DNA of 64,000 nucleotides from Sphaerodactylus townsendi (Eukaryota): NCBI RefSeq assembly GCF_021028975.2, contig NC_059435.1, positions 24,986,001-25,050,000 of the forward strand, written 5' to 3'. Under the pieces are notes generated by a model. The model made no database searches. It was given only the letters and a program-made list of their open reading frames with translations, and was not told the origin of the DNA. The position numbers were made by a program, and so were the translations under genes. Below, piece after piece: positions 29,018 through 59,962 of the stretch (positions are counted from its first letter, which is position 1; every line of letters begins with the position of its first letter).

Positions 29018-29253
29018 NNNNNNNNNNNNNNNNNNNNNNNNNNNNNNNNNNNNNNNNNNNNNNNNNNNNNNNNNNNNNNNNNNNNNNNNNNNNNNNNNNN
29101 NNNNNNNNNNNNNNNNNNNNNNNNNNNNNNNNNNNNNNNNNNNNNNNNNNNNNNNNNNNNNNNNNNNNNNNNNNNNNNNNNNNNNNNNNNNNNNNNNNNN
29201 NNNNNNNNNNNNNNNNNNNNNNNNNNNNNNNNNNNNNNNNNNNNNNNNNNNNN
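29018..29253. other. Assembly gap
   Basis: Run of N. Confidence 1.
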
Positions 29254-33053: not shown

Positions 33054-33204
33054 GGCCCTTTCCGCACATGCAGAATAATGCACTTTCAATCCACTTTTAA
33101 TGCACTTTGCAGCTGGATTTTACTATGCAGAATAGCAAAATCCACTTGGAAACAATTGTGAAAGTGGATTGAAAGTGCATTATTCTGCATGTGCAGAAGG
33201 GGCC
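33054..33204. mobile_element. Harbinger-type MITE (~150 bp hairpin)
   Basis: Long TIR ggccctttccgcacatgcagaataatgcactttcaatccac / gtggattgaaagtgcattattctgcatgtgcagaaggggcc; same family as 52935. TSD not evident. Confidence 0.8.
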
Positions 33205-34562
33205 CTGGACATCATAGTGGAGGAGGCAACATTCTCATAATATATAAGGACTGGTTTTGTTAAAGCATTGCCTTGAATTAACACAGTTTTAATTTTGCTG
33301 TTTTTAATAATTATGTTTTTTATATTTTTTCTTGATCGTACCTACTGTGGATCACAGTTATCTGGGGAAAAGATTCACAAATATTTAAATAAATGTTTAC
33401 ATAAATAAGAATTGTCCCAGAGGCTGTGCTGTGCCACTCAAGGTACCCTGCTTTGTGTGCCTAGCTCCTTTCTGAAACATCAGAGTTGCATTCTCTATGT
33501 GCAATCCTAAGCAATCCTGGTAAATAATTTTCATTTTATTCTGGTTGGCTTACTCCTAGGAAGCTGTTCTTAGCATTGCAACCTCTGTTTCTTCCCTGTT
33601 ATCTCTACTAGTCTGTTAAATTAAAGGAGAATAATGTTCATTGTAATAGGCTGGTGTGATGGAGACTGTTTAAGGATGAGTTGACCCAGTCACAGAACCT
33701 TGAGGGACAGGAGGATTGAAAAGGAAAAAAAACCCCTGAGAGTTCCATCTCAAATGGAAGTTGAGAAAGAAACAATTAAAGAAACTGATGGTTGATAACT
33801 GATTTTGAAGCTGATCGTTGAGGCTGAAGCTGGAGAGAAACACATTTGCATCAGTTCAAGAAGGATTATGTGTGAGAGAGGGGAGTGATCTGAGAGTCCT
33901 TCTCTAAGGGAAATAACTCTTAAATAGAGTGATCCCTAACCCGTTGTAATTGGAACAGTTCCTAAGTAAATAGAGTGATCCCTATCCAGTTTTAAGGAAG
34001 AAAACTGGAGAAATTGTGTTTGTTCTAACTCCTCCAATGTAGGAACTATTATTTCAAGCTTATGTTAACTTGTTAACTATTGTTATGTTAACTATTGTTT
34101 CAAGCTCATGTTAACTGTCAAGTGACATCTATCTCAGTTCCTTTATTAGATGTATCAACACCTGTCAGTCAAATACATGGCATACATCTTGACTACAAAA
34201 TGTATTTTGTCTATAAATACCTTATATGTGGGACAGAAAAATTACAAGAGACAGTTCATAAGTCTTGGAAGTGACAGTAGTGGTTGGTGAACAAATTAAA
34301 AAAAATTAAAATAAGAGGAGATCCATCATAACTGGAAACAAAGCAGAAGGTAAATCAATTCAGGAGGAAATTGCTGATGTCCAGAAAAGAGATCAGCAGA
34401 GCATTAATAAGGGGGTTGGCACTGAATAGTGAGGGGGAAAGGGAGGACTCTTAAAAGATGGTTGTGATGAATCGGGGAGGGATTTTTCTCAAGAGGTAGA
34501 ATTTATGCCTGGCAGCCACAGCTGACTATCCAAGTACTTCTCCTTAGGTATGGATCATGATG

Positions 34563-34850
34563 ATGAAAAAGAATTTGAATTTATATCCCACTTTTCTCTT
34601 CCATAAGGATTCTCAAAGTGGCTTATATGCTCCTTTCCTTCCTCTCCTCACAACAAACATCTTGTGAGGTAAGTTGGGCTGAGAGTGAGAAAATTGGGAT
34701 TAGCCCAGAGTCACTCCACAGACTTCATGTGTAAGAGTAGGGAAACAAATCTAGTTCACCATATAAGAGTCTGCCATTCATGTAAAGGATTGGGGAATCA
34801 AACCCAGTTCTCCAGATTAGAGTCTACTCGTATTAACCACTGCACCATGT
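34563..34850 (-). mobile_element. tRNA-derived squamate SINE
   Basis: Same family as 637 and 14882. Confidence 0.85.
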
Positions 34851-35648
34851 TGATCTTGCTTCATTCATCTATTTGTTGCAGTTGATACCATCCACTCTAG
34901 ATGGAAGTTCTCTAGGGCCAAGCTTCCGCGACGGATGGCTGCAACACATGACGCCGTGGAACGTAAAGAACCGGGCCATAGCGAGCGCTTCCGCATCGCT
35001 GAAGGGCGGAGGTGCTGCGATTCGCCACTGCCGCTCGAACGCTTAAACCGCGCGCTGAAGACGCCGTGATTCAGAAAAACGCTTTAAACCACTCTTTTTC
35101 CCATGTGACGCGATCTACGCCAGCACTCGTATGTAACAGCCGCCTAGGGAGCCGCCCTCAAACGGCGCTCTGCCAACGACATCTCCGCAGTAGCGCGCCA
35201 TTTTGGGAGGGGATGAACTGCTCCAGCTGCCATGATGGTGAGGGCTGGGGCCGTTTCAAGTTGACAGGAGAGCTCCTCTTCATGGTGGCTTGAGACTCAC
35301 GCAGCCGCTGCAGCTGTGAAGCTGCATGATTGCACAGCTACACACCCTCGACCAAGGCATGGGCGAGATGCGCCTCCGGCAGAGACAATGCCGCCGCCCT
35401 GAATGAGATCATGCATAACGGGACACAAGGGGTGGGAGCCATGGTCTACATTGACACTTCCCTGCGGCTACAATGGGCTGGGGGGAAAGTCCCGTCCGTC
35501 CCATTGTCACCTGAGGGCTTTCTGCCATTGGCCAGGAAGGGAAGTTTGGAGAAACTACCCAGAGACTCTATTGCAGGACGACAATAATCAGACCCCATTG
35601 GCATCAGGTGGATTTTGTATTGAGCCTGTGTGTTGGGCCACCCCAACA

Positions 35649-37450
35649 ATGCCTGGCAATAACAGGGCACATGCTGAGCGCCAAATTCGGGAGAGAGGAG
35701 TCATTGGGAGAGACAGGGTGACCCGTGGACCTTTGGACATATGGGGAGACCCACAGGTGCAGCATTCTCTCACAAGCTAATGGTGCTAACACACAACATA
35801 CACATCTTTCAGCCGGATAGCCCAGCAGATGACAGCTCTGGGCCACCGGCTGACAGCCATTGAGTGCCGCGAATAAAACAAAAGCCATGCGGTATGAATT
35901 CGGCTTGTGCAGTAGCATAACCGAGGGACAGGCAATGAGAGAGCCACCTGTCCCTACTTTGATGAGCTGCAGCTGTGAGTACTGAGAGTGTGGGATGTGA
36001 GCATTCAGCCTGGACGAAAGTGGCAAGAACTCTACACTCCCTGCCAGCCCCATTAGAGGGGCAGAGGGGCAGCACGTCAGCCAAACCAGCACCACAGTGC
36101 CAGTGTGGGAGGACACAATCCAGAGGGGAGGGGACCCTTCTGCTGCTGTGAGGGACCCCTGCACCTGCTAGCAGCCCCAAGTGGACTCAGGGTGAGAGAG
36201 GAGGTTTCACTTCTCCACCTATTAAAACACAAACTGTTATCCCAGAATGGCTGCTCTACCCCTCCCTCTCTGTGAATCCATGAACCATGGGAAGTAGAAG
36301 CCACACTGAATTTCCTACCTGGATCAAGTTGCTCCCCAGAAAGCAATAGCTGGCTCCAGCTGATAAGTGCAAGTATGTGCAGGGCAAGAGGGAGGAATGG
36401 GGTAGGTCAGGGTCACTCACAAGGCTAATTGGTATGGTGCCAGTCTCTGCCTCACAGAGAGGTGGAGCTCCTCTTCCATCCACCACCAACCCCCTTAATG
36501 AAAGTCACTTACTGTGTCCCATAGACATAACTGCTGTCAAGACACAGACCCTGGTGAAGTAACCATGCACACGGGCCACCCCTCAGTTGTCTCTAGGTAA
36601 GGACCACCCCACCTGACTGTAGCCGCAGAGGGGAGGGCTTCCCAAAGTGTGCCTCATAGAAGGCCAAGGCTGAAATGCACTTTGTCCCTCTCTCTGACAG
36701 GAGCCACATCAGAGTCACCCACCCTGGGGGAGGATGAAGACCAGCAGGGGGAGGAGCAACAGAGAGATGAGGAGGGAGATGCTGATTATGGGGAAAGGCC
36801 ACTCAGAAGGCCCCCTCAGCGAGGTAAATCCCCAAAGATGGCTGTATGGGTGGGTCCAGGGAAAGGGGGGGGGGGAATGCAACCAGCCTCCCACCACTGC
36901 ACAGTCCACAGTCCATGCAAGACGGCAGCAGTCTGGAATCACCACCTCCAAGGGCAGAATCCTCAGAGAGGCGACTGCATCCCAAAGCTCGATCATGCCC
37001 TCGGGCGGGTTCAAGTGCGCTGCCTGGGCCAAGGTCATGAAGTTGGAGACCAGTAGCCAGCTGAAGCAGAGAACCAGCAGCAGGCTCAGGTGGCAGCAGA
37101 GCAGGAGGGCGGCATGCGACATTTCTGGACGATGCCGGATCAGTGGAGAGGCTTCTCTCCCTCACAGCAGCGCCTGCACTCCAACAGGCCACCTCCCCAC
37201 AGCAGCCCGCAGACCCATCGAAGCTCATGGCCTGAGTTTTGGACAGAAGTCCCAAGGAGAATGACAGACCTCAGGCTGCAGCAGCAAGGTGACTCCCGTG
37301 TGTGTGTGGGCGCCAAGCACAGCACCGCCCCCCCCCCTCACCTGAGCTCCTCAGCAGCAGCCACCTCCCCGGCAGCCACCACACCCCAAATCCCCAAAGC
37401 GAGGCAGATGTATCGCAGAGGAGGGGCCAGTTGGGCCCCACCTCCAGTTT
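35649..37450 (+). pseudogene. Harbinger Myb/SANT-like (trihelix, MSANTD-like) DNA-binding protein gene, frameshifted, probably multi-exon
   Basis: Across frameshifts 35690-35990 reads RGVI..LDIWGDPQVQHSL..HIFSRIAQQMTALGHRLTAIECR.NKTKAMRYEF..HNRGTGNERATCPYFDELQ. An acidic segment (GEDEDQQGEEQQRDEEGD) follows a ctctctctgacag acceptor at 36700. The start and 3' end are approximate. Confidence 0.88.
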
Positions 37451-37459
37451 CCAGTGGCC

Positions 37460-38720
37460 ACCCACAGCCAGCTCATACATGAGGCAAGCCTTTTCACAGC
37501 CACCTCTCCCTGGGAGGTAGCTTGCCCAATCTTCCCCTGAGCCTCACATGCTGCAGAGTCCTGAGCCACCCACTCTTCAGCCCTTTGTGCAAGGCAAGCA
37601 AGTGCCAGAGGGGAGGGGGGGCGGGCTGCACCCCTCGTTTGCCACAGTGCTCACCCACAGCCAGCTGGAAGGAGCTTGCTCACCCCCTTCCCCCCTTGAG
37701 AGAGTTTCCTCTCACTCGGTAGCCAGCCCATGGAGTAGGTGGCTGCTAAGGCACCCCTGTCTGGAGGCAAGCTTGTGCCCAGAAGAGTGGGGGGGCGGCT
37801 AACGCATTTCTGCCATAGTGCCTACCCAGAGCCAGCTGAAGGGAGCCTCCTCGGACCTCTGCTCGGCCCTCCCCGAGCTCTTTCACTCTGTAGCAGCTCA
37901 TATGGAGGCCTGCTGCTGCACCCCCCCTGCTCGGGAGAGGCAAGCTGGAGCCTGCAGCAGTGGGGCTGCTGGACCCACTTCTGCCACAGTGTCACCCAAG
38001 AGCCAGCTGGAAGGAGCCTTGCCTGACCCCCCCCTTCCCCCTGAGCCCCTTCTACTTACAGCCAGCTTCCATGGAGCTGGCTGCTCCTGCACCCCCCTGC
38101 TTCGAGGCAAGCGAAGCCCAGAAGAGGGGCGCTGCTGGACTCCACTCTCTGCCACAGTGCTCTCCACCCAACAGCCAGCTGAAGGGAGCCTGCTCACCCC
38201 CTTCCCCTGAGCTCTTCACTTGCAGCTGTGCTTCCATGAGCATGGCTGCACCTGCACCTGCCTCAGCTCGAGTGCAAGGAGCCCAGAAGAGAGTGGGCTG
38301 CCATGAGGGACTTCCAGCATCCACTCTGGCTACCCACAGCTAGATGGAGAGGGATGTTTGGCCCCTTCCTTCCTGAGAGTTTTCACCACTCTGTAGCCAG
38401 CCCCTAAGCTGCCTGCTCCCCACCTCCCCCCCCACAAGGTAGGGGAGGCCATGGAGGGGGGTCCACCAAGAAGACTCTCACATGCACTCTTGGTCACCCC
38501 ACAGACAGCTCGTGCAGGAGACAGCTCTGGCCACCTTCTCCTGAGAGCTCCACACACCTGCAGCTTGTTCCTGGACCTCTGCAACACTCTCCTCCCCCTA
38601 CTAAGCAGTATGCTGTTTGCAGAGATGAATCAGCTGGCCCAGCCTCCTCCTTTGCTGGCCACCCACAGCTAGTTGTAGGAGCTAGCCCAGCCCTGTCCCC
38701 TGTCCTTGTTAACACTGCAG
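37460..38720. repeat. Diverged tandem array, ~7-8 units of 164-172 bp
   Basis: The anchor ca(c)agccagctg(g)aagg(g)agc recurs at ~37660, 37831, 38002, 38174, 38339, 38504 and 38668, with a weaker copy at 37467. Confidence 0.85.
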
Positions 38721-40689
38721 CCAGCTCCTGAAGGTAGTCAGCAGCCCTCCCCTAGTGCAAACATCGGGCGAGCTAGTCCCATGAGGTGGTTGGTGTTGCT
38801 ACCCAGCTGCCCTGCAGGTGACAGGGAAACCAAAGGGAGACATGGGCCCGCCTCCCCACCCAAAAGCGAAGCTCGAGCACCCCACCACTCTCAAGGGGTG
38901 GTGTAAGGTGGCAAGGCTAGTCAGCCAAGTAAGCAAGCCAGGGCAAAGGGCAGGGTGATGGGAGAACAATGTGAGGGAGGGGGTGGTTGTGGTGGTGGTC
39001 AGATAATCCCTGTGAGGGCACAGAACTTGAATTAAAATTACCTGTAAGAACCCCACCCTTGCTACTGTTGTTTCTGTTGTGCCACAATGTGAGTGGAAGT
39101 GGGGCTTGTGAGTGGGTGCAGGGGCTGGTGAAGGGCAGGGACATGCTGATCAAGGGGGGTCCAGATTGGTGGCCCTGACATCAATTGTTGCTCCTTTATG
39201 TAACTTTGGCCCACTTTTCCCTTGACAGAGGGAAAAATGGCAATGGATCTGTGTTGTGCTTGTAAGGTGTCAAAGGTGTTATGAGTTTCATGCTTCTTGG
39301 GCCTGCACTCCATTGTGTATCGGTCAGCATGCAAGGGAGGGGAGGGAGGGAGAGTCCCCACCCACCAGGCCACAGTGAATCACTGCACCATGCACAAGGG
39401 GCTGCTGTCTTGTGGGAAGGCTGGACACAGTGTAGGGTGAGGGGAGAACTCCTGTAAAGAGATGGTGGGTGTGGCAGTAGCAGTGGCATCCCTTGGTGGC
39501 CAGTGATCTGGATGGAAAGGTGTCTATGGGATTTCCACCCTGCCTAGTGTGGTTTGCAAACCCCCCCCCCCCCACTGGATGTGGAACATGTGACTGAGCA
39601 CTGGGGCTGGTGTGCTGCAGGGACACAAAGATGAGCCTACTGTGAATGATTGAATAACTTTATTGAGAAAACATTAACAACACAGTGATAATTCTACAAC
39701 ACGCCCTGATTCCCTCCCCCACAGGCCCAGTGCAGACTCCTCCCCACCCAACAACAGTGCAGTAGCCCCTCGCCAACTCCCAACAACAAGCCCCCCACAC
39801 ACCCTCTACCCTGACCCACAACAAATCCCCTGCTCTCTCCAAAACCCGCAGTGCTGCAGACCCCCCCCCCACACATCATGGACTCCCCTAGGAATGCTTC
39901 CCTCCCCCCCACAAGCATTGTTCTGTGGCAACAGTGCCTATTAGTGGCAACAACCTGGGCCAATATCCCAAAGATGCCATGCCATCGAACCCCCTTCAGT
40001 CCTGAGTTGCCCCTGCTCAGCTACTAGGGTGTGTTCTCTGAGCTAGAGGGCAGATCTGCAAGGTGTGGGGCAGGGCCACCCCACTCACCGTATGCAGGCA
40101 AGCACCTGGCACTGAGGATGGTGTACTGACAGCCATGGTGCTGGCTGCCTCCTGCTCCGACATCAAGGATGGGGAACCCCCCCCCCCGCATTCCTGTTCA
40201 AAACTCCAGCCACACCTTTGTGTGTTTTTCAATTGTTGTCGTACTTAGTTGGTATTTGGCCTGCAGTGGATGCATTGTTTGGCCTAGCAGCACTAAACTT
40301 TCAGGTGTTGGTCGGGGGAGTCTCCTGATGTTCCCACCCAGGTTTTGTGTGGTGTGGTCCAGGGGCTCCAACGGGTAATGCGACTCCCAAATTGGGTGTG
40401 CCCCCATCCCCCCATTGTTGCCACTCGGGGAGCTGTGGAAGATGGTGTGCTACACCTTTTGAGGGATCCATGCATAAATTGGGACCCCCTGAACTGAACT
40501 GCACCAAACCTGGGTAGTATCATCATGAGAGTCCCGCACTAATTGGCTGAAAGTTTGATGCTGCTAGGTTAACCAGTGCAGCCCTTGACAGCAGCCACCC
40601 TCTAATTTTTTCCAGATTATCCTTTCAGATCCACCCCCTTTGGCATGGATTTACAGGGATACTCTGAGGTCCTAAATTTAGACAAAGAG

Positions 40690-41280
40690 GAGTAGTGTGG
40701 ATCTGAATCTCCCCCCCCCCCGCCTCTCCTGTAGGAGGCTCAGTGCGGCTTACATTCTCCTTGCCCTTCCCCCCTCACAGCAAACACCACCTGTGAGGCT
40801 TGGCTTCATGCCAGAGATTTGCAAAAATCGCTGGTGACTAGGGCAAGGTTACCCAGCTGGCGTTTGTGGGACTACACAGGCTTCTTTGATTTCCCCAGCT
40901 GAGCCTCCACAGCTCAAGCGGCAGAGCACAAAATCAAGGCAGGGTCCTGCATATTAGAATGCACGCTGTTTCCAACCACTATGTGTCACATGGAGAATGG
41001 TGGTGCTGCTTCAGGGTAGATGATCCATTAAACAGCATCACTGTCACTGTTGTGTAACCAAGGGACCTCAGATTCTCCCCTGTAAGGTAGTGACCTAGTT
41101 TCTTTACAAACCATTGACATTGACAGTGCTGCTGTGGGGTGGGATTCCTGCATCACAGCGGCTGTCCCGGGGGAGGGGGGGAGGGGGGTGGGGGCAAAAA
41201 TCAGCTTCTGCACCACGCTCCATTTCCCCTCCATGCCTCAGGGCAGAGGGCAGGGGCAGGGGAGGCCAGGGCAGGGAAGC
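40690..41280. repeat. Internal SINE+flank module, copy A (most diverged)
   Basis: Reversed SINE, then ggtgctgcttcagggtag, agggacctcagattctcccctgtaaggt and gggcag repeats, in the same order as 48848-49420. Confidence 0.55.
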
Positions 41281-41399
41281 TCCCCAGGCCACTCAGTATG
41301 TCACCCCTGCATGCTAAGTGCAGCAGGCATCAGGATCAGGCTGAGCCATCGGCACTTCATGGCCTAGCCAGGGCCACCCTCCCCCCCACGGTGCCGTGG

Positions 41400-43385
41400 C
41401 CAGCTCTTGAATAGATACTCAGCCAGCCAGGCTCCTCTGGACGGCTCTGCCCCTCCCTCGCCTCTGTGTGCATCATCCTGGGGGGGGGTTGTATGGACGG
41501 CCACGTGGAGGATCTGGCTGCTTCTTCCTGCTGGTGTGCTTCTTCTTCAGCTTGTGTGGGATTGAGCGAATCTGCTCATTGGGGAGATCTGGAGCTATGT
41601 GGCTACTGGCTCTCACATTGTGGCTGTGCAGGTGCACCACACATGCCGCTTATAATTGAGGTGGCATTCTCGGGTCTGACCCACAGAGGGTTGAGAGAAT
41701 GCATCTCCACCGTGCCTCTTCAGGCCAAAATGCACGCCTCCACCCACGCTTCTTTGCATGGGACAGGATGTGAGTTGGAAGTTTCGCTGTTGCCATGCTG
41801 GCACAAGCGAAACCACGGCAGGTGTGAGCAGCCACTATGGCGCCAGGTGGGCTATAGAAAGCACCATCCCCAATACCACAGGGGGGGTATGGACAATAAT
41901 TCATTGATTGTCAGCATGGGCCTCTGCAGGCAAGTAGATGCCCATGTCCATGGCTTCTGACAGAAGTGCGTTTCAATGAAACACAAATGCACTCATTGTT
42001 AAGCACCAGAGTAGCTTGCCTCAGTTTTTCATTGGATAAAACATTCTCGCGTCAGCTGCTACAGAAGCTGCTGTGCAGGAGTTTGGAGGAAACGCGTTTT
42101 TCGATTAATGTGCTGACCCGGGTGCTCCACCCGGGTGACAGATCCGATGTGACACTCCATCCACAGCCCCAATGCAGTGTGTGGAAAGCCAAGGGCGGCA
42201 AAACCAGCCATCACCCTGTAGGGGAAACAGACATTGGTACATAGGTTGGGGAGGTTGGCCAGTACAGGGAGGGGTGATCTGCAGCTGCTGTGTAGTTGCA
42301 TTGACATAAGCATGGGAACACACACACCCTCTGGGTCCCCTTGCCACTGCCGGCACCTTCACCTGGTCCATCGGCCTCAAGCATCGCATCTCAGTCACCT
42401 TTGGGTATAGTAATTTCCGGCACTTCTACAGCTATGGCAAACTCCAGGACACTGTTTGCCACAGTGGCCAGTCCCACTCCAAACTGTTGGCCCACTTCAC
42501 GAAGTAGCTGTTGGCACTTCTGCTAGGTACCCATACAAGGCCATGGCTACTGCTTTTAGCATGGGAAATGGCATGGACGAGCATTTGTGTCTTGTCGTTT
42601 CCAAGTGTGGACGCAGGGCTTCTAAGCGAGGTAAATGGTTGCTGCCTTTGGCCATCCTGAAAGTTTCCTGCAGCCACTCCCTCATCTGTCCTTCAGACTG
42701 TCATTAGAAGCTACATCCCACCAGGTGTGGCTCTGGGGACCTATCCAATGGCGGGGTGTTGGGAGTACTCATGTAGCAAAACCAGCCAGCGAATATTGTG
42801 CTTCTACGTACGTCAATGGTAAGCGCCAGTGGTGTCAGATTTGAGTCACTAGCTCCTTCTCGGCAGGATCGACGGGTGTAGCCTCCCTCAGCCAGCCAGT
42901 CAGATCAGCTGCCCTCTGCGTCATGAAGGTGTTCGTGGGTGAGGTATGGCGGGCACCTGCTCCTGCTCATCGTGGTAGTACTTTCCTGCCGTGACACCAC
43001 CTCTCCTAGATCCATGTCTCACTATGCAGACAGCAGCTAGCTGCACGGTTCCCTGGTTCCACTCTGGAAACGGAATGGAGACTGGGGAGGGAGGGGGGCT
43101 TGTAATCACATGATTGGGGACCTGGACCAGCCCTGCAGAATAGCTGCTCTCAGCCAATCAGGCTCTGCTTGATGTTCAGACGCCAGTCTGCCACAACTTT
43201 GTGAGGTGTGTAGCCCGGACATTGTGGGCGGGCAAAACATGCAGCATCCGCGAGCGCTTTTGTTCTCCTGATGGCAGCAGCGTTAAACTGTCAGGGATTG
43301 CTACGGTGACTCTCATAATGATAATGACTGGATTTGCTAAGGTTTGCCCTTCTGTGGGCCACAATTCCCGTATGGACTGCAACAC
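41400..43385 (-). pseudogene. Harbinger (HARBI1-like) DDE transposase, heavily frameshifted
   Basis: Ordered motifs across frameshifts: RHWIGPQSHTWWD; WLQETFRM..EALRPHL; AVAMALY.YLA; EVGQQFGVGLATVANSVLEFAIAV; GFAALGFPHCIGAVDG (D at ~42160); HINRK; IGDGA (~41866); LSHA..VE.AF..ARWRC; ACVV.H.N; EGRAV..LA.YLF. The 5' boundary is approximate. Confidence 0.92.
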
Positions 43386-44149
43386 ATGTACTCACCATCC
43401 CCTACAGTGTCAAATGGGATTTCAGATAAGATAGGGACTGCACCTTTGAGGGTATCCATTACTGGGGAGTCCATGACACAAACCTAATCAAATTGGTGCA
43501 GCTCCCCTTAGTGAGAGTATTCTGCATATACCATCTTCCAGGGTTGTAATTCCAGCTGACCAATTGCACCTCTGACAGCAGGTACAACTCTGAAAATCTC
43601 CATGTTCATGTATTACATCCAGTCATGGATGTAATGTGAGGATTTCAGTTCCTCAGCTTAGCAGAAGAAGAGATAGGATTCACCCTCCCTCTCCCACAGA
43701 GGATCCAAACAGACTGGCAATCTCCTAGTCCTGCTTCTGTCCCACCCCTGGGTGAGGGTGGGAGGCAGTGATGAGAGACCTGGAGATAATCTGTATAGCC
43801 TGGTCACACCATTGCTACCCCTGTGTGGGTGTGGACAGGCTGAGCTGATTTCCCCACATACACATGTGCAGTGCAGTCACGTTGTCTGGGAGCAGAAACA
43901 TGTTTCTAAGCATTGTAATGCCCCTGCTCTGAAACACTGCATCACTTTGGCAGCGTTCCCTTTGCTTTCCCGCCACCCCCCATTCCCCTGTAAGTGCAGT
44001 GCAACTGCACCTCAGAGGAGGGGCTGAGGGTCTGTTTTCTCAACGCTGCCCACCCACAGCCAGATGAAGGAGGGATGTTTGGGTCCCATCCCTGAGCCTT
44101 CACCCCGCAGCTGAAGTGCTGAGCTGACCAATCCACCATGCACATGGGC

Positions 44150-44600
44150 ATCCAATCACCTTTCCCTTCCTCCCCCCTGCCACAACAAACACCCCTGTGA
44201 GGTGGGAGGGGCCATAGAGAGCCCGAGGAACTATGCACCAGTCTGTTGGGATACCCAGCTGGGTGTGCCCTGGAGTGCAACTGGCTACTGTGAACCATCC
44301 AGACAAGTATGTACAGCTCTTGTCAGCATAGCACTAAAACCACTGAAGCTGTCACTGTGGCAGTGATGATCAGGGTGGGGATGAGCTTACATCCCCTGCA
44401 AATAACACCATGTCCATGTTGTGCTGTCTAGAGCAATGGGATTGTCCCTTCCTGGTGGCGTTACTGTAGGAGTTGGGACTGTCCAGGTAATATAATACTG
44501 CCAAAGTTGATGCCTGAGGTGGACCTGAGCAACAGCATCAGCTGTCAGGGAGAGGGGCAGGGGCAGGGCAGAGCAGGGCAGGGCAGGGCAGGCATTCTGC
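44150..44600. repeat. Internal SINE+flank module, copy B
   Basis: Reversed SINE body, then cagggtgggg..ggagttgggactgtccag..ggtggacctgagcaacagc..(gggca)n; direct repeat of 48900-49380. Confidence 0.7.
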
Positions 44601-44789
44601 CTCTCCTTTGCCTGTAAGACAGATGCCTGGCTGAAGGAGTGGTGCCAGGGTAGAACTGTGAAGAGCATGTAGCCACACCATTTGAAAGCTGTCAGACAGC
44701 CCCCCCCCTTCAGGGTGTTTCTGGCAGAATCTTCGCGCCATGGACAATGCACCTTTCAGATCCTCCTGCTCATGCAGATAGTGGCTGCC

Positions 44790-45375
44790 TCCATACGCCA
44801 GCTCCTAAAAAAAAAAACATCACTCTGCTGGCAGGGGAGTGGAGACTGCCCTGCCCTGCCCTGCTCCCTCCCCCCCCCTGGTAGCAGCTGTGTTGCTGCA
44901 GGCCACCCCTCAAACAGCATTTTCTCACTGACAATGGTGTGTCAACTGGTAGAGTCTGAACCTCCACTCAAGGCCACCTGTAGGGAAAAAATCCCATGTC
45001 CCCAGGTAGCAACATGTGGGATTGATGCTGCTCTAGGAATGTGTTACATTCCCACCCTGACATACAGCATCAATGGTAAAGTGGGATAAGTTGTGCTGCA
45101 GAAAGCATGGGTATCTCCGAAACGTGGAGGAACAGGTGTCTGTTCCCTGCTAACTTGATGGAGCTGCACATGTATCTGGGACATGCAGCTTCTGCTGAGC
45201 AATCCCACGCATGCCAGCTGGGTGACCTTGGCCCATACACGTTTCCCTCTCTGCTCCCTTCAGTAACCACCTTCCCTCACAGGGGTCTGTTGTGAGGGGG
45301 GAAGGGCAATATCAGCCCCCGAGCCTCCCCTGCAGGACATGAAACTATGTTCATACATAACCAATTCTTCTTCTT
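44790..45375. repeat. Internal SINE+flank module, copy C (inverted)
   Basis: The reverse complement aligns by eye along its length with 48848-49420 (gttagcagggaacaga, gggtggcctgcagcaaca, ttttaggagctggc). Confidence 0.85.
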
Positions 45376-48300
45376 ATATGGGCTAGATTGTACTGCTACA
45401 CTGCCTATTGCTGTAAGATTTCCAGATCTAGGGTAGGCATGTTCTGGGATGTGGAATGTTGTTCCAGGAACAACATACAAAACAAACCAATGCTTGCCCA
45501 TCATGGGGAGGTCTACTGCCCATGGGGTGGCAAAACCATGTTTGGCTGATACGCACTGGGTGTGGCTGCTGGGAGGGTGCGTTATGCCAGCCACACGAAA
45601 TTCGCCAAATGCAGGCCTTTGGGCTGGCCTGTCTGCCTAGGGACGGCACTGCCGTCTCCCCCCCACAACGTGAAATGGATGTGGGATTATGTGATTGAGC
45701 AGTGAGGCTGGTGTGGGTGGGACACAAAGTTAGGGGATACCTGTGACTGCTTCTAAAAATTTTTGTATTCTGCAAAACATTGAAACACTGAACACCCCCT
45801 GCAAGCCCTCCCAGACCCTCCCCCCCTGGCCCAGCCATGCAAACCCCCCAGAACTCCTGCAACCCCAACAAGCCCCAGACTCTCCTTGCAGGCCCACAAA
45901 CTTAACTCCCCACTAAGAACTCCCAGTAACTCCCAGCAAGTTTCAGAGACCCTCCCCCAGGCCTGGCCAGTCTAACTCCCACCAAGAACTCCCCCCCAAC
46001 TCCCAGCAAGCCGCTAGGACCCTCCCCCCGAAGTCCACCTTAAAACTTCCCCAAGCAATGCTCCCCCAACAAGGCACTGCTCAATACAATTGTCAGCCAG
46101 CCCAACACTCCTGGCTATCACGCACTGCCGCTTCACCAACCCCACGAGTCCACAGTTGCCGTGAGGCTAGCTGTCAGGGTGGGTCCTCCGAAAGCTGGAG
46201 GGCAGACCGGGTTGTGTGGGGCAGGGCTGACCCCACCTTCAGGGTGTGCTTCTGGGGTAACCTGGCGCTGATGAGAGAGGGACTGGCAGCCAAGGTGCTG
46301 GCTGCCTGGTCTGACAGCACTGCGCTGTGGGAAGTGGGCTGAGGAGGGGTGCCAGGTGTTGGCGGTAATCGGCATGCCACCAGGCGCTGCAGCCAAGTGC
46401 ACACAAAGGTAGTTGCCGGGTGTCCTTCTGCCCCGTCGCCACCAAGTGCAGACAGTCAGCCGGGCCCATGATGAAAAGTCAGCCGGCTTCCATGCAGCCC
46501 TGCGGTGAGAAGAGAGCAGGAACATTAGCAGTCACGCCAAGCGCCACTGATGCCTGCCAGCAGCTGCTGACTATGATCATTCCCACCACCCCATGTGGCT
46601 GACCTTGTTTGACCACCCACAAAGCAGGCTGGTGGTGCACTTCACAAGTGGGGAGCACACCACTTCCACTCCTACACCCAGGTGGCAGAATTCTAGCCCA
46701 AAATTGGTGCATGCAGCTTGTCTGTTCCTGTACTTGCATTGTGGGTCTGGTAGGCTGAACACCTGCCAGCTGCATCCTTGCAGGCCCCATACCTGCAGGC
46801 TGCAGGGCAGCTAAAGGCTGACCGGCTGTACCCGGCTGGGCCCATGCTATGGGCCTCCCTGCCAGGCCAGACCAAGGAGCAGGTGTAGTATGGATTCCCG
46901 GAGCTTCCGGCACGAGCCAACCCTGCCAGGCTGACCGGTAGGCTGACTCCAGGGAAGGCAATCTACCGGGCTCACAGCTGGACTGGTCTAGTCTGGCAGC
47001 TCTTCCCCCAAGCTCATCTGCCTGGCCTAGTGGGGCAGGTGCCGCCCAGCCTTATGGCTGGGGCAAATGGTAACACAGGCCAATATACACAGTGTTCCTC
47101 TGTAATGTTTGATGCCAGAAATTTCTTATGAAGCTCCAAGTGTTTTTTCCTGCATATGGTCCCTAAATGACTATTTGGCCTATCAAGGTTTCCCAACGTG
47201 AGATCTTGTAATTCTACACATCTGGCTCAAGCAGGAGTACTTTGAGGAGATGGCAGCTGTGGCAATGCTGCCAGTCCAGAATTATCCTGGGGATCAGAAA
47301 GCAGACTCCATGCAAATCCAGCACCCCAAAGCAGAAATGGTGCAGGGGGGCCCACTGGTCCACCCCACAGCCCGTACAATCTGGCCAAAGGTGTGCATGT
47401 GCAGCTGTGGGTCACCGCCCAGTGCTGTGCACTGCCACACACAAATCCACAGCAACCCATCACTCGACTTCCACATGCACGCTTGCCTACCAGCATCCTG
47501 GCATGGGTATTGATGGCCTGGGAGGCTGCCCTGCTGCAGCCTCCCATGGAGGGAAGCGGAGGAGCTGTGGCGGCTGCGCAGGGGCTCCACTCCGCTTCTG
47601 CCGGGCGCTGACGTGGGCTTGAATCGGACGAAGTCCCTCCAGGTCCCTGCCAGTCAGCTTCGTCCGTGGGCTCCCTCGGCGGCGCTGAAGGGCTGCCACG
47701 AAAGTCACGCATGGTAATAACAAAACCAACACCCAGCCTCCGGCGAGACCCCAACGTAGACATGGCTGGCCACATCTCATGTGCTACCTGCCCAGCCAGC
47801 GAAGTGGGCAATATCGCTGCGATCACCTTCTGCGCCGACATCGGTCCACCCCAACCCGGGCTCCCAGCCTACGCTGGGCGACATGGCAGCTGGCGATGGG
47901 CTAAACGCGGGGGCAGTCAGAGCCACGCAGGGTGGCTCTCCACCTTCCAAGCGGTGGCAGTGAAGAAGTCCCTCTTGAGGCTCTTTCCCCACTTGGTGCA
48001 GGCCTGCACCCCAGCGCGGTGGGAAGCCTGCAACCTTGGGAGTGTCTCCTTGCCACCGCTAGCTGGAACCGCTGTCCACATTGGGTAGTCCCGCTGGCTA
48101 AGGTGAGAGGGAGGCAGGGCGTGTCTGGCTGCTGTCCCCTGATTAAAAGCGGGAGGAGGGGATGGTGACCTCCTCCCGCCTGCCAGTAGACTCCCACCGC
48201 CTGGGTGCAATCATGGCCTACACGGGAAATGGCTGGGAAAAGCGAAGGGACCTCTCTATAAAAGTGCAGATCTGGCCCCTGTAGCACTGGGTCGATTTGA

Positions 48301-48847
48301 AGCCAACGGATCGCCCAAGGGCGACGCATGCTCTCAGAGGGGAACCCCTTTTGAAATCACTCCGCCATGCGGGGACGCTGTGGGTCGCGAGCTCCCATGG
48401 TAACCGCCATTGGCAAGACCATGAGGCGAGACAGGTCTTCTCGGCTTGTACGCACCCCTGTTTCCCAAAAATAGTGACACACACACACCACTATAAGCAG
48501 TTTGCAGAAACTTTCCTTTGCACTTAGTACAGCCAAGGGTGTGGACGCCCCACAGATTAATGCAGCACCAGGCCCCACTCTCATACTCGCATTCTGAGCA
48601 GCAGCCAGAGATCAGGCTGCCCCCCCAATGCTTCGGGTCAGGGGATGGCAGCAACTCCCACCCTTCCAGCACTGTGGGGCCAGCTCCTTGAACAGGACCC
48701 AGCTAGGCATTCTCTGACAGCTTCCAAGCACCCTCTCAGCCTGTGGTGGGTGTCAAGCTGGGGTTCCACAGATGCCCATGTGGTGGCACAGCTGCATCTT
48801 CCTGATGCTGCCCTGCTTCTTCAGTATAGCAGTATGACCTATCAATG

Positions 48848-49420
48848 GAAGAAGAAGAGTATGGATTTAAATCCCCCCTTTCTCTCCTGCAGGAGACTCA
48901 AAGGGGCTTACAATCTCCTTGCCCTTCCCCCCTTACAACAAACCTCCTGTGAGGAAGGTGGTGCTGAGAGACCACAGAGAGGCTGTGTATGGCCCAAGGT
49001 CACCCAGCTGGCATGTGTGGGAGTGCTCAGCTGAAGCTGCATTTCACAGATACGCATGTCCAGCTCAGTCATGTTAGCAGGGAACAGAAACCTGTTGCTC
49101 AGTTTTGGAATGGCCATGCTCTCAAACACACAATCAATTTGCCACTGATGCTGTTGCAGGGTGGGGTGAAATGCATCCCTAGGCAGCAGCAATGTTCATT
49201 TTTTCCTCCATGGGGACATGGAATTATGACTGTCAGGTGGTCTTAGTGGAGGAGTTTGGACTCTCCAGTTGGACAATAATGGGCCACCTGTCAGATATGC
49301 TATTTGATATAGGGTGGCCTGCAGCAACAACAGCAGCCGCCAGGTGGGCAGGGCAGGGCAGGGCAGGGCAGGGGAGTTCACCCTTCCCGCCAGCAGCAGT
49401 GCGATGTTTTTAGGAGCTGG
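48848..49420. repeat. Internal SINE+flank module, copy D
   Basis: Reversed SINE from gaagaagaagag at 48848, followed by the shared flank ending ttttaggagctggc. Confidence 0.85.
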
Positions 49421-51029
49421 CCCAGGGTTGTTTCAGCCACGGATGGTCACACCTTTACTAGAAGCTTTGAGAAAGTTTGCACCCCCCTCTAAAAGTGTGT
49501 CTCCACATTTTCACTGGAATGGGCAAGCACCTTCCCAAGATCCATGGTGGCTGCATACAGATGGTGGCTGGGCCAAGGCTACATAGCCGGGTGTCACAGG
49601 TGACATGAACTGGGACTCTGACAGTAGCTGGGAGGGGAGCCGATGACAAATGGGGGTGGCTAAAACTTCAGGGTAGTCACTTTGGCCAATCGCTGCTGCG
49701 CTGGCTGATCGCCGCCTTTGCTTCGCCAGCCTGTATGTTTCCGCGAGTCACGTTAACGAGCGTAGCGTAGCGAAAGACGCCGCTTACGCCAGAGCAACCT
49801 ACGGCGAATCGATTATCTATGGCAATGCGACGCGTAAGAAATTCCGCTACTTCGTCTGTGCGTAACGCTTTTCTCAGAGCGCGTCGGCAATTCGCGCACG
49901 GCCATCGCTAAGCCGCTCGCGCGTGGAACGGCGGAAACGGCCTAGGAAAGGAGACCAGCCAATGCCTGCATCATCCCAGCTGCCCTCTCCTGTTCTGCTA
50001 GTGCATAGGCTGTTGCTTCTCACCAGCTTTTTGATTCTCTGCTAGCTTACTCACTGGTCTTTTGTCTTCCTCCTTTGCTCAAGGAGGAGTGGATTAAATA
50101 CATTGCTGGTCAGTGGTGTTCCATTCCTTCAAGGTCATCTTTGTAAGCATCTAGCTAGGTTGGTAAAATTGCTAACCTACCAGGAGGTTGTGAACAGTTC
50201 AAATTCAAACTTTGCAAAATCACAATGGAATATGCCTAGCTAAGTGGACTGCAGTTGCTACTTGTGGATAGAGTAAAATATTCTGATTGTTCGGAGTAAT
50301 GCTATAATATTTTGGAAACTTTTCTGTGATAGTTGTATAGCCAGCAGTAAGAACAGAAATTGGTGCCAATAGTATAGTGAAACAAATGAGCTAGTACAAA
50401 AAAATTGTACTTATCTAAATGTAAGTCATTTGGAAGGCACTGAAAACTTAATTTGCCAAAGTAGTATTCATGCAAGACATGCTGAAGTCAACCTGAACAC
50501 CTTGAATGGGCCACTTTCTATACAGAAGTCAAGAAAGGCAAGAATGTTAGAATACATGAAAAGTATACCAGTAGAAGCTCAGTTCAAATGTCACCACATA
50601 GTTACTTTCCCTTGAAGATCTGGTTTTGATTATGTGGATGTTTACCACACCATTATCAGTGACCTTGATAGTGATGGGATCTTGTTATCGTACATGCCTA
50701 AACCAATTATGAAAAGGTAGAATATAACACTGTCTTAATTTAAACATACAGGTTTGGATCCAGAAATCTTTGCTGCAGGCAAAAAAAGAAAGGAGAGGGT
50801 CTTGTTTGACCACCCAAAAAGTGTATTCTGAAAATCACAAGGCCTACATCTACAAAAACCAAACGTGGTAAGGCTGTAGTAGGCAGGAAAACAGGATGAA
50901 ATTAAATTTAAAAATCTGACTGAATTCAGGCCATGTAGTGTTTCAAGATCATTATATCCATATTTATAGATTGAGTCTTTATATGCATTATAGTTACTTT
51001 TGGGTAACCACTGATACTTTTCCTCTGTT

Positions 51030-51841
51030 GTGACATTTTGTGGATGCAGTTAGGAAAAAAAGCATTTGGATTGGGAAAAAGTGCCTGGATTGTGGACCAT
51101 TAAATAGATTAAATACTGTTTGGGTGGGGAGGGGGATTATAAGTAGGGAGTGTGTTTAGCTGCATATGCGGAACTGGAAAAAGCAAGAAAAAGCTGGATA
51201 AAGTTGAAAGTCAACTTTCTGGCCTGGATTTCTTTCAGAATGCCTGGATTTCTTCCTTTCATGCCCACAAAAGAGCATAAAGGGAAGTCTGGTGCCATCA
51301 GAGCCCATTCCAGACAGAACTTTGTGAGAGATCAGTGCAAAGCTTGGCCTTAATTGGTGCTCCTCCCTTTCAGTTTCTGGTCCTTTGACTGCTGCAACCC
51401 TTGGATTACTGCTGCCTGCCTGCTATCTGGACAAGAAGACGTTGAATGGTTTTAAATTGTCATGACCCTCTCTATGTTAGCTCAGCTCCTGCCATCCTTC
51501 TTGTTATTGGGGCCTCCTTGGACTTTTGTCCTGGGAACATGGAAAAAAGAATTCCCAAGCAAGTATGTTATCTGCTTTTGGAATGTCTATGTCTGTGTGA
51601 CCTTCCTCTGCCCTCTTTCCATTTGGCCTCCCTCCTTTCTGGGAAGTGTGTGTGTGTGTGCGTGTGTGTAGTGTCTGCGGGGAGAGGATCAAATATATTT
51701 CTGCTGGGAATTTATAATCTTTTGTTTGTAGGAGTCTGACCAGTTCAGACAATAGAGCTATTCCCATGTTTGTTATCAATAAAACAAGAATTCTACTCTT
51801 AAAGTACTGATTCCTGTCTGAGCAAGTCTGGGACTGTGACA
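51030..51841 (+). mobile_element. Possible solo LTR
   Basis: tgtgaca...tgtgaca ends (TG..CA), a TATA-like cataaa at ~51276 and aataaa at 51778 near the end. No TSD found. Confidence 0.3.
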
Positions 51842-52934
51842 GAAACAACTAGTTTATTTTCTAAATTATTTGGTTTTTGTAAAGTGTGCCTGTAGAACAT
51901 TTTTTTCCTTTGGCCTGCATGGGTGGAGCCTCTGGGCCAATGGAGGCCTAAAGGCCCTTCAGTTGCCTTGAGTTCAGTTTGGTTTCCATGTTTGTTTCAA
52001 GTTGATTAAAGGGTTTGTTTGTTTGGCTTATGTGAGAGCAGATCTACTGGTGTTTTTTTAATTCAGAGCTGGTTTTCTTGGGTGTTGTTTGTGGGAGAGG
52101 GGTGTTCCTTCACCCCTTCTTTCTTCTTTCTTGAAAACACTTGTCTTTTGATGTGGGACAAGGGCAAGGCAGGCCAGAAATCCTTCTGAGGCCTGAAGGA
52201 CTGATTGGTTGTATTCTCTTTTTTGTGAGGTTCTTCCTGTGACTTGGCAGCTTAGTTGGTTAGTTGCAGACTCTTCTGTTTGCCCTATAACTTGATTTCT
52301 TATCCTCTATCCCTATCCCCCCAGTGTGATTGCACCAAGCAGTGTGACAACTGGCCAACTCACTTTGCTTGCTGAGTGTTTTGTTCTTGAAAACTTGTAA
52401 AACTGTTAGATTGTAGTGGAAAAAAAACCCCTGAGTTTTAAGAATTATCATTTTTAGAATTGTTGTTAGATTGAGGTTCAGTTACAGAGAAATTACTGGA
52501 TTTGGCTAGATTTTGCATGTTGTCCTTTGTGCAGGACACATGTGTTAACTATCCCATGTATCTTAATAAAGCTGAAAAAACAGGGCTGTCTAATAACTGT
52601 GTGATTCTTTTCCAAATGAGTCTCCTCCCTCACTGCAAGGTTTAGAAGATACGCTGAAATGTTTCCAAGTGATTTGGAAGAGAATGTTGTTGGTCCACAG
52701 TGGCATACCAAAATGTCTGAGCCAAGGGCAGACCAAAAGGCCAAGTGCTTCTTTGGGTGAACATCTCATCTATTGACAGCTCTTGTCAACATTTCTTCAA
52801 AGACCAGACCACGCTGGTCTGCTGGGTGGTCTTGCTCTAGTTCCCAGGGCAACAATATCTTTTTCTCCCCAGAAAGACCACTCCCACCATCAGCACTGAG
52901 TATCTGAATAAGTTTAATCAACTTTACTAACAAA

Positions 52935-53075
52935 GGCTCATTCCGCACATGCAGAATAATGCACTTTCAAACTGCTTTCAGTGCTCTTTGAAGCTGTGCG
53001 GAATAGCAAAATCCACTTGCAAACAGTTGTGAAAGTCGCTTGAAAATGCATTATTTTGCGTGTGCGGAAGGAACC
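52935..53075. mobile_element. Harbinger-type MITE
   Basis: TIR ggctcattccgcac / gtgcggaaggaacc, 3-bp TSD aaa; homologous to 33054-33204. Confidence 0.85.
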
Positions 53076-53969
53076 AAAGCCTGGTGCATGGACCAGCCAG
53101 AAAAAAAATGTCACATCAGGAGTCTTTCTTTGTGTTCTCTTTCCACTTATTTGGCCATTGTGTGTTTCCTGAGAGCTGGTGGCATCCAGAAATGAAAGAC
53201 ACTATAATTATTTTCAACCTCATGTTTCGTCACTACCTGCAGCTTTTCCAGAGGCTGCAAAGTCTTCTGTAGTAACCAGGTTGTGTATTTCATTATCCAT
53301 CCATCATTCAAAGCAAAAAGGCTTCCTTGAAGAATTATGACACTCAGTTCTCACTATAACGTTATATATTGTGATAGAGTTTTTTTTCTGCACCCTGATG
53401 AAAAAAGAGATCAGTCATCCAAGGCCTGGAAGGTAATTACGGATGAGTGATGCCTGTTGTTCTGCTATGCTAACGATACACTGTAGTAGAATCTGCAGTA
53501 GTATCTTACAGCTACCGCTCAGTGGTGCTTATCAGCAGTGTAGCTCACCCATCAAAAAGTACTTAGAGGGGGGGAAAATCTTCCTTAGTGAGAGAAGGCA
53601 ATATCAAAACAGGAATGAATCTTATTGATTCAATCTCTACCACTCATAATATACTCTAAATATATTATTTATGCTTCAATTTGAGATGAGAGCATTACAA
53701 AGAGCGACATTTCACCTAGCACATTAAAGTAGAATTAGAGGCCTGGAAAAAAAACCGTCTGCAATATATGTAACCTTGTAAATGTAGCCCTCTGCTGGAT
53801 CCTTTTTATCCACGAGGAATTGTGGTTGAGAAACAAAAGAACATAAGGTGAAAGAGATCAGAGATGTGTTTTCTTATTGGGAAAAAAATATTCAAAACAG
53901 GTGGCTTTGGTCACCCGAAGTAACCACAGAATAAATGTGATAGAGGCAAAATTAATTTTCCTCCATCAC

Positions 53970-54470
53970 ACAGAATCATAGAGTTGGAAGAGACCGCAAG
54001 GGTCATCTAGTCCAACCTCCTGCGACGCAGTTACACACCATCAAAGCACTCCCTACTGATGGCCATTCAGTTTCTGTTTAAAAACCTCCAAAACACCACC
54101 CTTCGAGGCAGCATATTGCATGGTTGAATAGCCCTTACCATCAGGAAGTTCTTCCTAATGTTTAGGTAGTATCTTTTTTGCCCCTCATAGCTTGAATCCA
54201 TTTCTCTGTGTCCTAGTCTCTGGAGCAGCAGAAAACAAGCTTGTGCCATCATCAATATGACATTCCTTAAAATATTTAAACATGGCTATCCTGTTTTGAT
54301 TGCTCTCCCCTGAACACTCTCCAGCTTGTCAATATCGTTCTTGAATGTTGGTGCCCAGAACTGTACACAGCACTCCAGGTGAGATTTGTCCAACTCAGAA
54401 TAGAGTGGTACTATTACTTCCCTTGGCCTAGACACTATATTCCTACTGATTAAGCCCAGAATTGCATCAG
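53970..54470 (-). mobile_element. CR1 LINE 3' fragment
   Basis: agaatcatagagttggaagagacc..tctagtccaacc tail; the minus ORF reads YYLNIRKNFLMVRAIQPCNMLPRRVV, the CR1 ORF2 C-terminus. Confidence 0.88.
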
Positions 54471-55613: not shown

Positions 55614-55750
55614 NNNNNNNNNNNNNNNNNNNNNNNNNNNNNNNNNNNNNNNNNNNNNNNNNNNNNNNNNNNNNNNNNNNNNNNNNNNNNNNNNNNNNNN
55701 NNNNNNNNNNNNNNNNNNNNNNNNNNNNNNNNNNNNNNNNNNNNNNNNNN
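55614..55750. other. Assembly gap
   Basis: Run of N. Confidence 1.
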
Positions 55751-58397: not shown

Positions 58398-58480
58398 TAA
58401 TATACCGCCCTATCCCCGAAGGGCTCAGGGTGGTGAACAATATAAATATAATATATAAAACTTTCTTTCTTTATAAAGTA

Positions 58481-59830: not shown

Positions 59831-59962
59831 ATATTCAGTTGTGGTTATCATACAGATGTTTCCAGTTCCTCACCCCTGAGTTGGATTATTTTACATGGTA
59901 GTGGGGTAAGTTACTAAGTTTAGGACTGTGCATGAATATATCTTTGTTCCAGATATGATTGA

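What the first reader, a model, noticed from the sequence alone, without database searches (positions are those of the whole stretch)
34916..49942. A ~15 kb Harbinger transposon whose two canonical genes occupy less than a third of its length
Seen: matching TAG flanks, GGCC..TTCCGC termini, and convergent Myb/SANT-like (+) and DDE transposase (-) pseudogenes. Known: PIF/Harbinger elements encode this gene pair, make 3-bp TSDs and are usually only a few kb long. Inference: this is an unusually large, cargo-carrying lineage. About 6.5 kb (43400-49942) lies beyond the transposase, and ~4 kb separates the two genes. It may be an undescribed squamate family.
Basis: partly seen in the sequence, partly recalled or inferred. 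Interest (0 to 1): 0.85.

Follow-up and report, generated by a model that had tools for sequence, protein, structure and literature searches.

The report
Decayed 15-kb Harbinger-type transposon copy
This is a long-dead copy of an unusually large Harbinger-type jumping gene in a lizard genome; about half of its length is internal duplications and small nested repeats, not captured host genes.

Summary
The block 34916-49942 is real. It is 15,027 bp at 52-60% GC inside ~40% GC DNA. TAG flanks it on both sides, and it ends in GGCC..TTCCGC inverted termini (11-12 of 14 bases).

A Harbinger-type DDE transposase relic lies on the minus strand at about 42.9-41.6 kb. Five signature motifs stand in the right order and spacing. 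No Pfam, phmmer or homology search recognises any piece, so this support is motif-level only. The Myb/SANT gene on the plus strand could not be verified.

"Cargo" is not supported. 47% of the element is a 171-bp tandem array, ancient segmental duplicates, five SINE copies and a MITE. Four larger unique blocks remain:
- left end plus a first gene-like block (2.5 kb)
- transposase block (1.7 kb)
- an unidentified 2.25-kb block
- right end (0.37 kb)

Both ends are extremely CpG-dense and promoter-like, while the interior is CpG-depleted. I could not decide whether this means an old copy with unmethylated ends or a recent jump of a long-dead element.

TAG fits none of the six published TSD groups of this superfamily. 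No other copy could be reached, so family-level claims stay untested. The scan already reported a 16.8-kb three-gene giant Harbinger elsewhere in this genome (s1-745854).

The parts
34913..34915 (.). [quoted passage not shown]
   Evidence: read directly
34916..34929 (+). left terminal inverted repeat GGCCAAGCTTCCGC
34916..35400 (+). left CpG-dense terminal region (11-12 CpG per 100 bp over 34900-35200). Holds CTTCCGC twice (motif TTCCGC at 34924, 34989), a GCGCCATTTTG box near 35190 and ATGATG|GTGAGG at 35233. Promoter-like by eye.
   Evidence: the promoter reading is inference
   Evidence: by eye; no hit
37416..38750 (.). tandem array of a unit of about 171 bp, 60-80% alike
38935..39625 (.). 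two copies of a module spaced 482 bp apart
39524..40165 (+). module A, ancient duplicate of A' (45617-46319), 60% identity
   Evidence: 96.8 bits against a shuffle maximum of 34
40217..40618 (.). nested palindromic MITE-like repeat; relatives at 7473-7760, 8173-8551 and 24913-25083; a fragment at 43276-43496
40685..41193 (+). SINE-plus-flank module M4
41284..41550 (+). module B, ancient duplicate of B' (48568-48824)
   Evidence: 61.1 bits against a shuffle maximum of 35
41600..42900 (-). Harbinger-type DDE transposase pseudogene, with at least four frameshifts and four stop codons by my reading
   Evidence: no profile hit
43663..45403 (.). three more SINE-bearing modules: partial Mp 43663-43965, M1 44141-44787, and M2 44781-45403 inverted. 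One array unit lies at 43998-44096.
45617..46319 (+). module A'
46320..48567 (-). unique block U, unidentified. CpG patches at 47600-48400. Long minus-strand ORFs cover 74% of it (p about 0.04, uncorrected). Candidate third gene, unproven.
   Evidence: no hit; fold pLDDT 42
48568..48824 (+). module B'
48822..49570 (+). SINE-plus-flank module M3
   Evidence: very high depth in run X1
49690..49942 (-). right CpG-dense terminal region (13-16 CpG per 100 bp); CCAAT box near 49685, TTCCGC at 49739 and 49842
49931..49942 (-). right terminal inverted repeat, reverse complement GGCCGTTTCCGC
49943..49945 (.). right copy of the TAG duplication

Best explanation
A dead copy of a large DNA transposon of the PIF/Harbinger (PHIS) superfamily.

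It was cut and pasted as one GC-rich unit into a C|TAG|G site in AT-rich, gene-poor DNA. That produced the 3-bp duplication.

Its non-redundant core has a left end with a first gene-like block, a central transposase block, a third unique block (U) and a right end. These larger unique blocks total about 6.8 kb. The blocks are separated by about 7 kb of repeated spacer: a 171-bp tandem array, old segmental duplicates (A/A', B/B', SINE-plus-flank modules), five SINE copies and a MITE. So most of the excess size comes from internal duplication and nested repeats plus one extra unique block, not from captured host genes.

The transposase is ruined by frameshifts and stops, so the copy cannot move itself.

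Both ends look like CpG-island promoters facing inwards.

Shown: borders, TSD, inverted ends, motif chain, repeat map. Inferred: superfamily mechanism, promoter function of the ends, gene nature of block 1 and U.
For: - Sharp GC and CpG borders coincide with the TSD and inverted ends.
- The inverted end starts GGCC, as in Ping/Pong (PMC2836001). The TSD is 3 bp, as in most PHIS groups (PMC4482050).
- Five collinear DDE_Tnp_4-type motifs lie on one strand. Expected counts per shuffled 15 kb are below 0.001, 0.29, 0.60, 0.001 and 0.016.
- 7,108 of 15,027 bp are self-similar or shared with the rest of the window. The larger unique blocks left are 2500, 1725, 2248 and 372 bp.
- The duplicates are real: z about 27 and 14 against shuffles.
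- No other transposon protein domain appears anywhere inside.
- The scan reported a 16.8-kb three-gene Harbinger elsewhere in this genome (s1-745854). That is a lead, not a test.
Against: - No database or profile search recognises the transposase pieces, the Myb candidate or block U.
- The motif patterns were written after I had seen the sequence.
- TAG is not TWA and fits none of the six published PHIS TSD groups.
- The inverted ends are only about 14 nt, against the usual 25-50 (PMC9179366).
- The pristine CpG-dense ends sit oddly with a heavily decayed interior.
- No second copy was seen, so mobility of this unit as a family is not shown.
- In run X1 the last 200 bp of the element are almost absent, while interior and flank are present.
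Confidence: 0.6

Rival explanations
1. Same kind of element, but a recent insertion. A long-dead non-autonomous lineage, with its decayed genes, SINEs and duplicated spacers already on board, was moved recently by a transposase supplied in trans. Only the roughly 300-bp ends needed for transposition were kept intact along the lineage. That would explain why they still hold all their CpGs while the interior is CpG-depleted.
For: - CpG observed/expected is 1.1-1.55 at both ends and 0.0-0.4 inside.
- The TSD is perfect.
- The internal duplicates are 27-40% diverged. That is hard to fit with intact ends if all of it happened in place.
- In run X1 the flank is covered but the terminal 200 bp are not, while interior pieces occur at 93-95% identity. 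This fits paralogues plus an empty site.
- The scan note s1-745854 speaks of recently mobile relatives in other geckos.
Against: - No sibling copy was seen.
- CpG-dense DNA can stay unmethylated, and so keep its CpGs, without being young (general knowledge of CpG islands).
- The X1 contigs are about 90-370 bp long and holes prove nothing.
- Two metagenome scans for the ends found nothing, which is uninformative.
Confidence: 0.25
2. Composite or macrotransposon. The two CpG-rich ends belong to a short non-autonomous element or to two neighbouring copies of one. The 14 kb between them is ordinary GC-rich host DNA carried along, which happened to hold an old Harbinger relic, SINEs and satellite-like arrays.
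For: - The interior looks like host intergenic DNA: one SINE per 3 kb, a MITE, tandem arrays, CpG depletion and no detectable genes.
- There is an age contrast between ends and interior.
Against: - A Harbinger-type relic inside Harbinger-type ends would then be a coincidence.
- No inner copies of the ends were found.
- The single 9-mer echo of the right end, at 35249, is within chance expectation.
- The uniform GC across 15 kb fits either reading.
Confidence: 0.1
3. Not a transposon. A GC-rich segment was placed here by rearrangement or misassembly, and the TAG and GGCC symmetry arose by chance.
For: The right GC change point lies 85 bp outside the proposed end. Only one copy was seen.
Against: - About 0.02 such TSD-plus-end pairs are expected within the uncertainty of both borders.
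- CpG density stops exactly at both ends.
- There is a transposase relic inside.
- There are no N gaps within or next to the block.
Confidence: 0.05

Closest known systems
Canonical PIF/Harbinger elements (for example Ping/Pong/mPing of rice)
   Same: Inverted ends begin GGCC; 3-bp TSD; DDE transposase of the same type; a second DNA-binding gene is expected (PMC2836001; PMC9179366).
   Different: - 15.0 kb here against a mean of 4.1 kb.
- TSD is TAG, not TAA/TTA.
- Ends match over about 14 nt only.
- About half of the body is internal repeats.
- There is a third unique block.
- The ends are CpG-island-like.
NuwaII group of the PHIS superfamily (target C|TNA|G)
   Same: C before and G after a 3-bp duplication that starts with T. 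Found in animals, with a Myb/SANT second ORF (PMC4482050).
   Different: The duplication here is TAG, so the target reads CTAGG and not CTNAG. One copy cannot define a target preference.
Three-gene giant Harbinger reported by this scan elsewhere in the same genome (s1-745854, 16.8 kb)
   Same: Same genome, similar size, decayed. A transposase plus more than one further gene-like block would match the three main unique blocks found here.
   Different: No sequence of that locus was available to me, so shared ends, TSD and block order are untested. The two Myb genes could not be verified here.
Harbinger-Snek of sea kraits
   Same: A squamate Harbinger with autonomous, solo-ORF and short non-autonomous derivatives that keep the same ends and TSD (PMC8437027).
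   Different: Snek is young, abundant, horizontally acquired and described as a standard two-gene element. This copy is decayed, 15 kb long and of unknown copy number.

Membership tests
PIF/Harbinger (PHIS superfamily) | DDE transposase alignable to the superfamily catalytic region (criterion E below 1e-4 in PMC4482050) | tested here: inconclusive
   Five signature motifs stand in order and spacing on the minus strand. No Pfam DDE_Tnp_4 hit on any stop-free piece. phmmer against 1.8 billion proteins found nothing real.
PIF/Harbinger (PHIS superfamily) | 3-bp target-site duplication | tested here: met
   TAG at 34913-34915 and at 49943-49945.
PIF/Harbinger group in the strict sense | TSD composition TWA | tested here: not met
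   The TSD is TAG. It also fits none of AT, none, ANT, CWG or C|TNA|G. This is a single copy, so it is a weak test of a statistical preference.
PIF/Harbinger (PHIS superfamily) | Terminal inverted repeats (usually 25-50 bp) | tested here: met
   11-12 of 14 nt, with a 2-nt indel and a GGCC start. This is shorter than usual.
PIF/Harbinger (PHIS superfamily) | Second gene for a Myb/SANT-like DNA-binding protein | tested here: inconclusive
   Candidates by eye at 36.85-37.2 kb (+) and 47.9-47.55 kb (-). No hit in Pfam or homology searches.
PIF/Harbinger (PHIS superfamily) | Repeated family: other copies with the same ends in different flanks | not testable with these tools
   No other copy in the 64-kb window. 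No tool searches gecko assemblies. The one run found has very short contigs.
Gene-capturing (cargo) transposon | A recognisable host gene or gene fragment inside the element | tested here: not met
   149 stop-free pieces of 62 aa or more give no Pfam family below chance level. Three homology searches were blank.

The most novel reading that the evidence does not exclude
Geckos harbour a lineage of giant Harbinger-type transposons with these features:
- a three-unit core;
- modular duplicated spacers;
- CpG-island ends that escape methylation or are kept by selection for mobility;
- a C|TAG|G target outside the six described TSD groups of the superfamily.

On this reading the present copy was moved as a 13-15-kb non-autonomous unit long after its genes died.
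Probability: 0.25. Interest if true: 0.55.

Novelty: new variant of a known kind. Interest (0 to 1): 0.4.

Why it matters
Harbinger elements are textbook small two-gene transposons. A review of giant eukaryotic transposons does not mention them (PMC6431247, zero occurrences). In squamates they are documented mainly through one horizontally acquired snake family and a few domesticated genes.

A 15-kb unit that moved as a whole would stretch the known size range of the superfamily. It would also give a natural case for asking how much DNA this transposase can carry.

The contrast between CpG-dense ends and a CpG-depleted body is a testable case. It asks whether transposon ends stay unmethylated in the germ line or are preserved by repeated mobilisation.

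On its own, though, this locus is a single decayed copy, and the scan has already reported a similar element in this genome.

Tried and rejected
**Protein searches that found nothing**
- Pfam on all stop-free pieces of the transposase and Myb regions, and on all 149 pieces of 62 aa or more in the element: nothing above chance.
- NCBIfam: nothing.
- PDB sequence search: nothing.
- phmmer of the best transposase piece against 1.8 billion representatives: one spurious tandem-repeat protein.
- Three homologous-protein searches (Myb frame, GAVDG piece, largest ORF of block U): none scored. The length filter also bars full-length relatives of such short pieces.
- ESM Atlas: no usable hit once, then busy three times.
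- AlphaFold on the 213-aa ORF of block U: pLDDT 42, so no fold search was made.

**RNA and reads**
- Rfam and tRNA scans: nothing inside the element.
- Reads: only one run, holding 9% of the words, with very short contigs. It shows SINE copy number but no structure.

**Structural tests**
- Paralogous empty site within the window: none.
- Inverted repeats or a TSD around block U or the right part: none convincing.
- tblastx between the left gene block and block U: only low-complexity matches.
- Metagenome scans for both ends, allowing CpG decay: 0.

- A frameshift-corrected read-through of the transposase was not searched. The tools take no protein read through a stop by reference, and long typed strings are barred.
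Full report
**Borders and ends.** The stretch 34916-49942 is a clear compositional island. In 2-kb steps the window runs at 39-50% GC outside the block and at 52-60% inside it. A two-segment likelihood fit puts the left GC change point at 34915 (support 34873-34928). The right one is at 50028 (49985-50123), 85 bp outside the proposed end, because the first 85 bp of flank are moderately GC-rich. CpG density, however, stops exactly at 49942.

At these borders the sequence reads ...ttctc TAG GGCCAAGCTTCCGC... and ...GCGGAAACGGCC TAG gaaagg.... The ends are complementary over about 14 nt, with a 2-nt indel, and unrelated beyond that. A 3-bp duplication with ends at least this good occurs in 2.5e-6 of random position pairs. 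That is about 0.02 expected within the uncertainty of both borders.

The direct repeat can be read as up to 5 bp (CTAGG), because the palindromic GGCC overlaps it. TAG with GGCC...GGCC is the symmetrical reading. There are no N runs in or next to the block.

**The transposase.** The three-frame translation of the minus strand shows, in the order expected for a Harbinger transposase:
- an FRM...LRPHL... N-terminal part;
- QQFGVG.ATV;
- GAVDGVSHRI;
- INRK;
- GDGAF;
- AKKRGWRRAFWPEEARWRCIL;
- AACVVH.

By my reading these are spread over three frames, with at least four frameshifts and four stops. A regex chain for five of the motifs is found once, at 42170, 42109, 41871, 41757 and 41649. In 1000 first-order Markov shuffles of the element, the first motif never occurred at all.

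I wrote the patterns after seeing the translation and from my own knowledge of the Pfam DDE_Tnp_4 consensus, so this is a post hoc test. Even so, the joint chance is far too small for that to matter.

No objective search agrees:
- Pfam at E up to 10 on every stop-free piece;
- NCBIfam;
- PDB;
- phmmer against 1.8 billion representatives, whose only hit is a spurious repeat protein;
- a word-based homology search.

I read this as a real but badly decayed transposase gene.

**The Myb/SANT gene.** The plus strand around 36.85-37.2 kb can be read as Myb-like in two different frames. That shows how little such a reading is worth. Nothing scores. A second candidate lies on the minus strand at about 47.9-47.55 kb and is equally unsupported. 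This part of the observation stays unverified.

**What fills the length.**
- Only 2.1 kb of the element resembles anything else in the window. This is five copies of one SINE (40701-41088, 43702-43944, 44138-44332, 45104-45387, 48848-49240) and a palindromic MITE-like repeat (40217-40618) with a fragment at 43285-43496.
- Self-comparison adds much more:
  - a tandem array of a ~171-bp unit at 37416-38750;
  - a pair of modules 482 bp apart at 38935 and 39417;
  - module A (39524-40165) against A' (45617-46319);
  - module B (41284-41550) against B' (48568-48824);
  - SINE-plus-flank modules at 40685-41193, 43663-43965, 44141-44787, 45403-44781 (inverted) and 48822-49570.
- A/A' and B/B' score 96.8 and 61.1 bits, against shuffle maxima of 34 and 35. 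Their alignment shows islands of near identity.
- Together, repeats cover 7,108 bp, or 47%.

Four substantial unique blocks remain, plus about 1.1 kb of small gaps between the repeats:

| Block | Coordinates | Length |
|---|---|---|
| Left end plus first gene-like block | 34916-37415 | 2500 bp |
| Transposase | 41551-43275 | 1725 bp |
| Block U | 46320-48567 | 2248 bp |
| Right end | 49571-49942 | 372 bp |

The two flanks of the transposase are collinear in modules. The left reads A-B-[transposase]-M and the right reads A'-[U]-B'-M. This suggests an old internal duplication followed by different losses. That step is inference.

No reverse transcriptase, other transposase or host domain is detectable anywhere. 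The flanks are equally empty. So "cargo" in the sense of captured genes is not supported.

Block U is the only real candidate for extra content. Its minus strand is 74% covered by ORFs of 100 aa or more, against 44% +/- 19% in shuffles (p about 0.04, uncorrected for 14 tests). Its largest ORF folds at pLDDT 42.

**The ends.**
- Both ends carry 11-16 CpG per 100 bp, with observed/expected of 1.1-1.55. The interior is at 0.0-0.4, except for patches at 42.8-43.3 and 47.6-48.4 kb.
- TTCCGC/GCGGAA occurs five times in the element, all within about 200 bp of an end.
- By eye, the left end has two CTTCCGC boxes, a GCGCCATTTTG box and ATGATG followed by GTGAGG. The right end has a CCAAT box. They look like inward-facing CpG-island promoters. 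No tool here tests that.

Pristine ends around a ruined interior can mean one of two things. Either the ends have stayed unmethylated in place, or a long-dead non-autonomous lineage jumped recently and only its ends were kept by selection for mobility. I cannot decide between these.

The one sequencing run found (X1, 9% of words, contigs of about 90-370 bp) covers the flank and much of the interior at 93-100% identity. It almost lacks the last 200 bp of the element. This leans slightly towards a young insertion with paralogues elsewhere. But holes in such contigs prove nothing, and copies with decayed CpGs would fall near the 80% likeness cut-off. I gave read laying 6,000 letters.

**Comparison with what is known.**
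- Ping/Pong ends also start GGCC, and their TSD is TAA/TTA (PMC2836001).
- The PHIS survey defines six groups by TSD: TWA, AT, none, ANT, CWG and C|TNA|G. It gives 4,124 bp as the mean autonomous PIF/Harbinger consensus (PMC4482050).
- TAG in a C|TAG|G context fits none of these groups, though one copy cannot define a preference.
- Usual inverted ends are 25-50 bp (PMC9179366).
- A review of giant eukaryotic transposons does not mention Harbinger.
- Squamate Harbingers in the literature I could search are Harbinger-Snek of sea kraits (PMC8437027; PMC10379679) and a Harbinger element described as intact and apparently domesticated near the harbiTRIM genes (PMC12262214).

**Earlier notes of this scan.**
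- A 16.8-kb three-gene Harbinger was reported elsewhere in this genome, with intact relatives in other lizards (s1-745854). The three main unique blocks found here would fit that layout. I could not compare sequences, so this remains a lead.

**Verdict.** This is a real, single, decayed insertion of a large Harbinger-type element. Its size is explained mainly by internal duplication and nested repeats, plus one unidentified extra block. Family, age and copy number remain open.

Noticed in passing
window 33052-33206: A near-perfect palindrome matches the plant miRNA models MIR3440 and MIR5565 on both strands, far below their gathering scores (52.6 bits against 105). Most likely it is a hairpin-forming MITE in the flank, not a miRNA gene.
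   Followed up: no
window 637-959, 5887-5971, 14882-15164, 20978-21225, 34556-34847, 61479-61727 and five copies inside the element: One SINE family of about 300-390 bp. By eye its true orientation is the reverse of the alignment, with a tRNA-like GGGTTTGATTCCC head, though ARAGORN calls no tRNA. In run X1 its word depth reaches about a million. Density is one per 3 kb inside the element and one per 8 kb outside.
   Followed up: partly
window 7473-7760, 8173-8551, 24913-25083, 40217-40618, 43276-43496: A palindromic MITE-like repeat of about 400 bp is present in both orientations in the flanks and twice inside the element.
   Followed up: partly
window 48431: Two contigs of run X1 both begin to match exactly at 48431. 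One has 0 differences over 158 nt at depth 110, and its other 110 nt are unlike the window. This points to a repeat or rearrangement border inside block U in the related genome.
   Followed up: no
window 35249-35257: GGCCGTTTC, identical to the first nine bases of the right end, occurs 334 bp inside the left end in the same orientation as the left end. About one such 9-mer match is expected by chance in these CpG-rich ends.
   Followed up: partly
window 1-34900 and 49950-64000: No Pfam domain appears in any of 127 stop-free pieces of 75 aa or more. The surroundings are AT-rich and gene-poor, with four N runs at 29018-29253, 55614-55750, 58159-58397 and 61728-61866. The N runs were left untouched.
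   Followed up: yes
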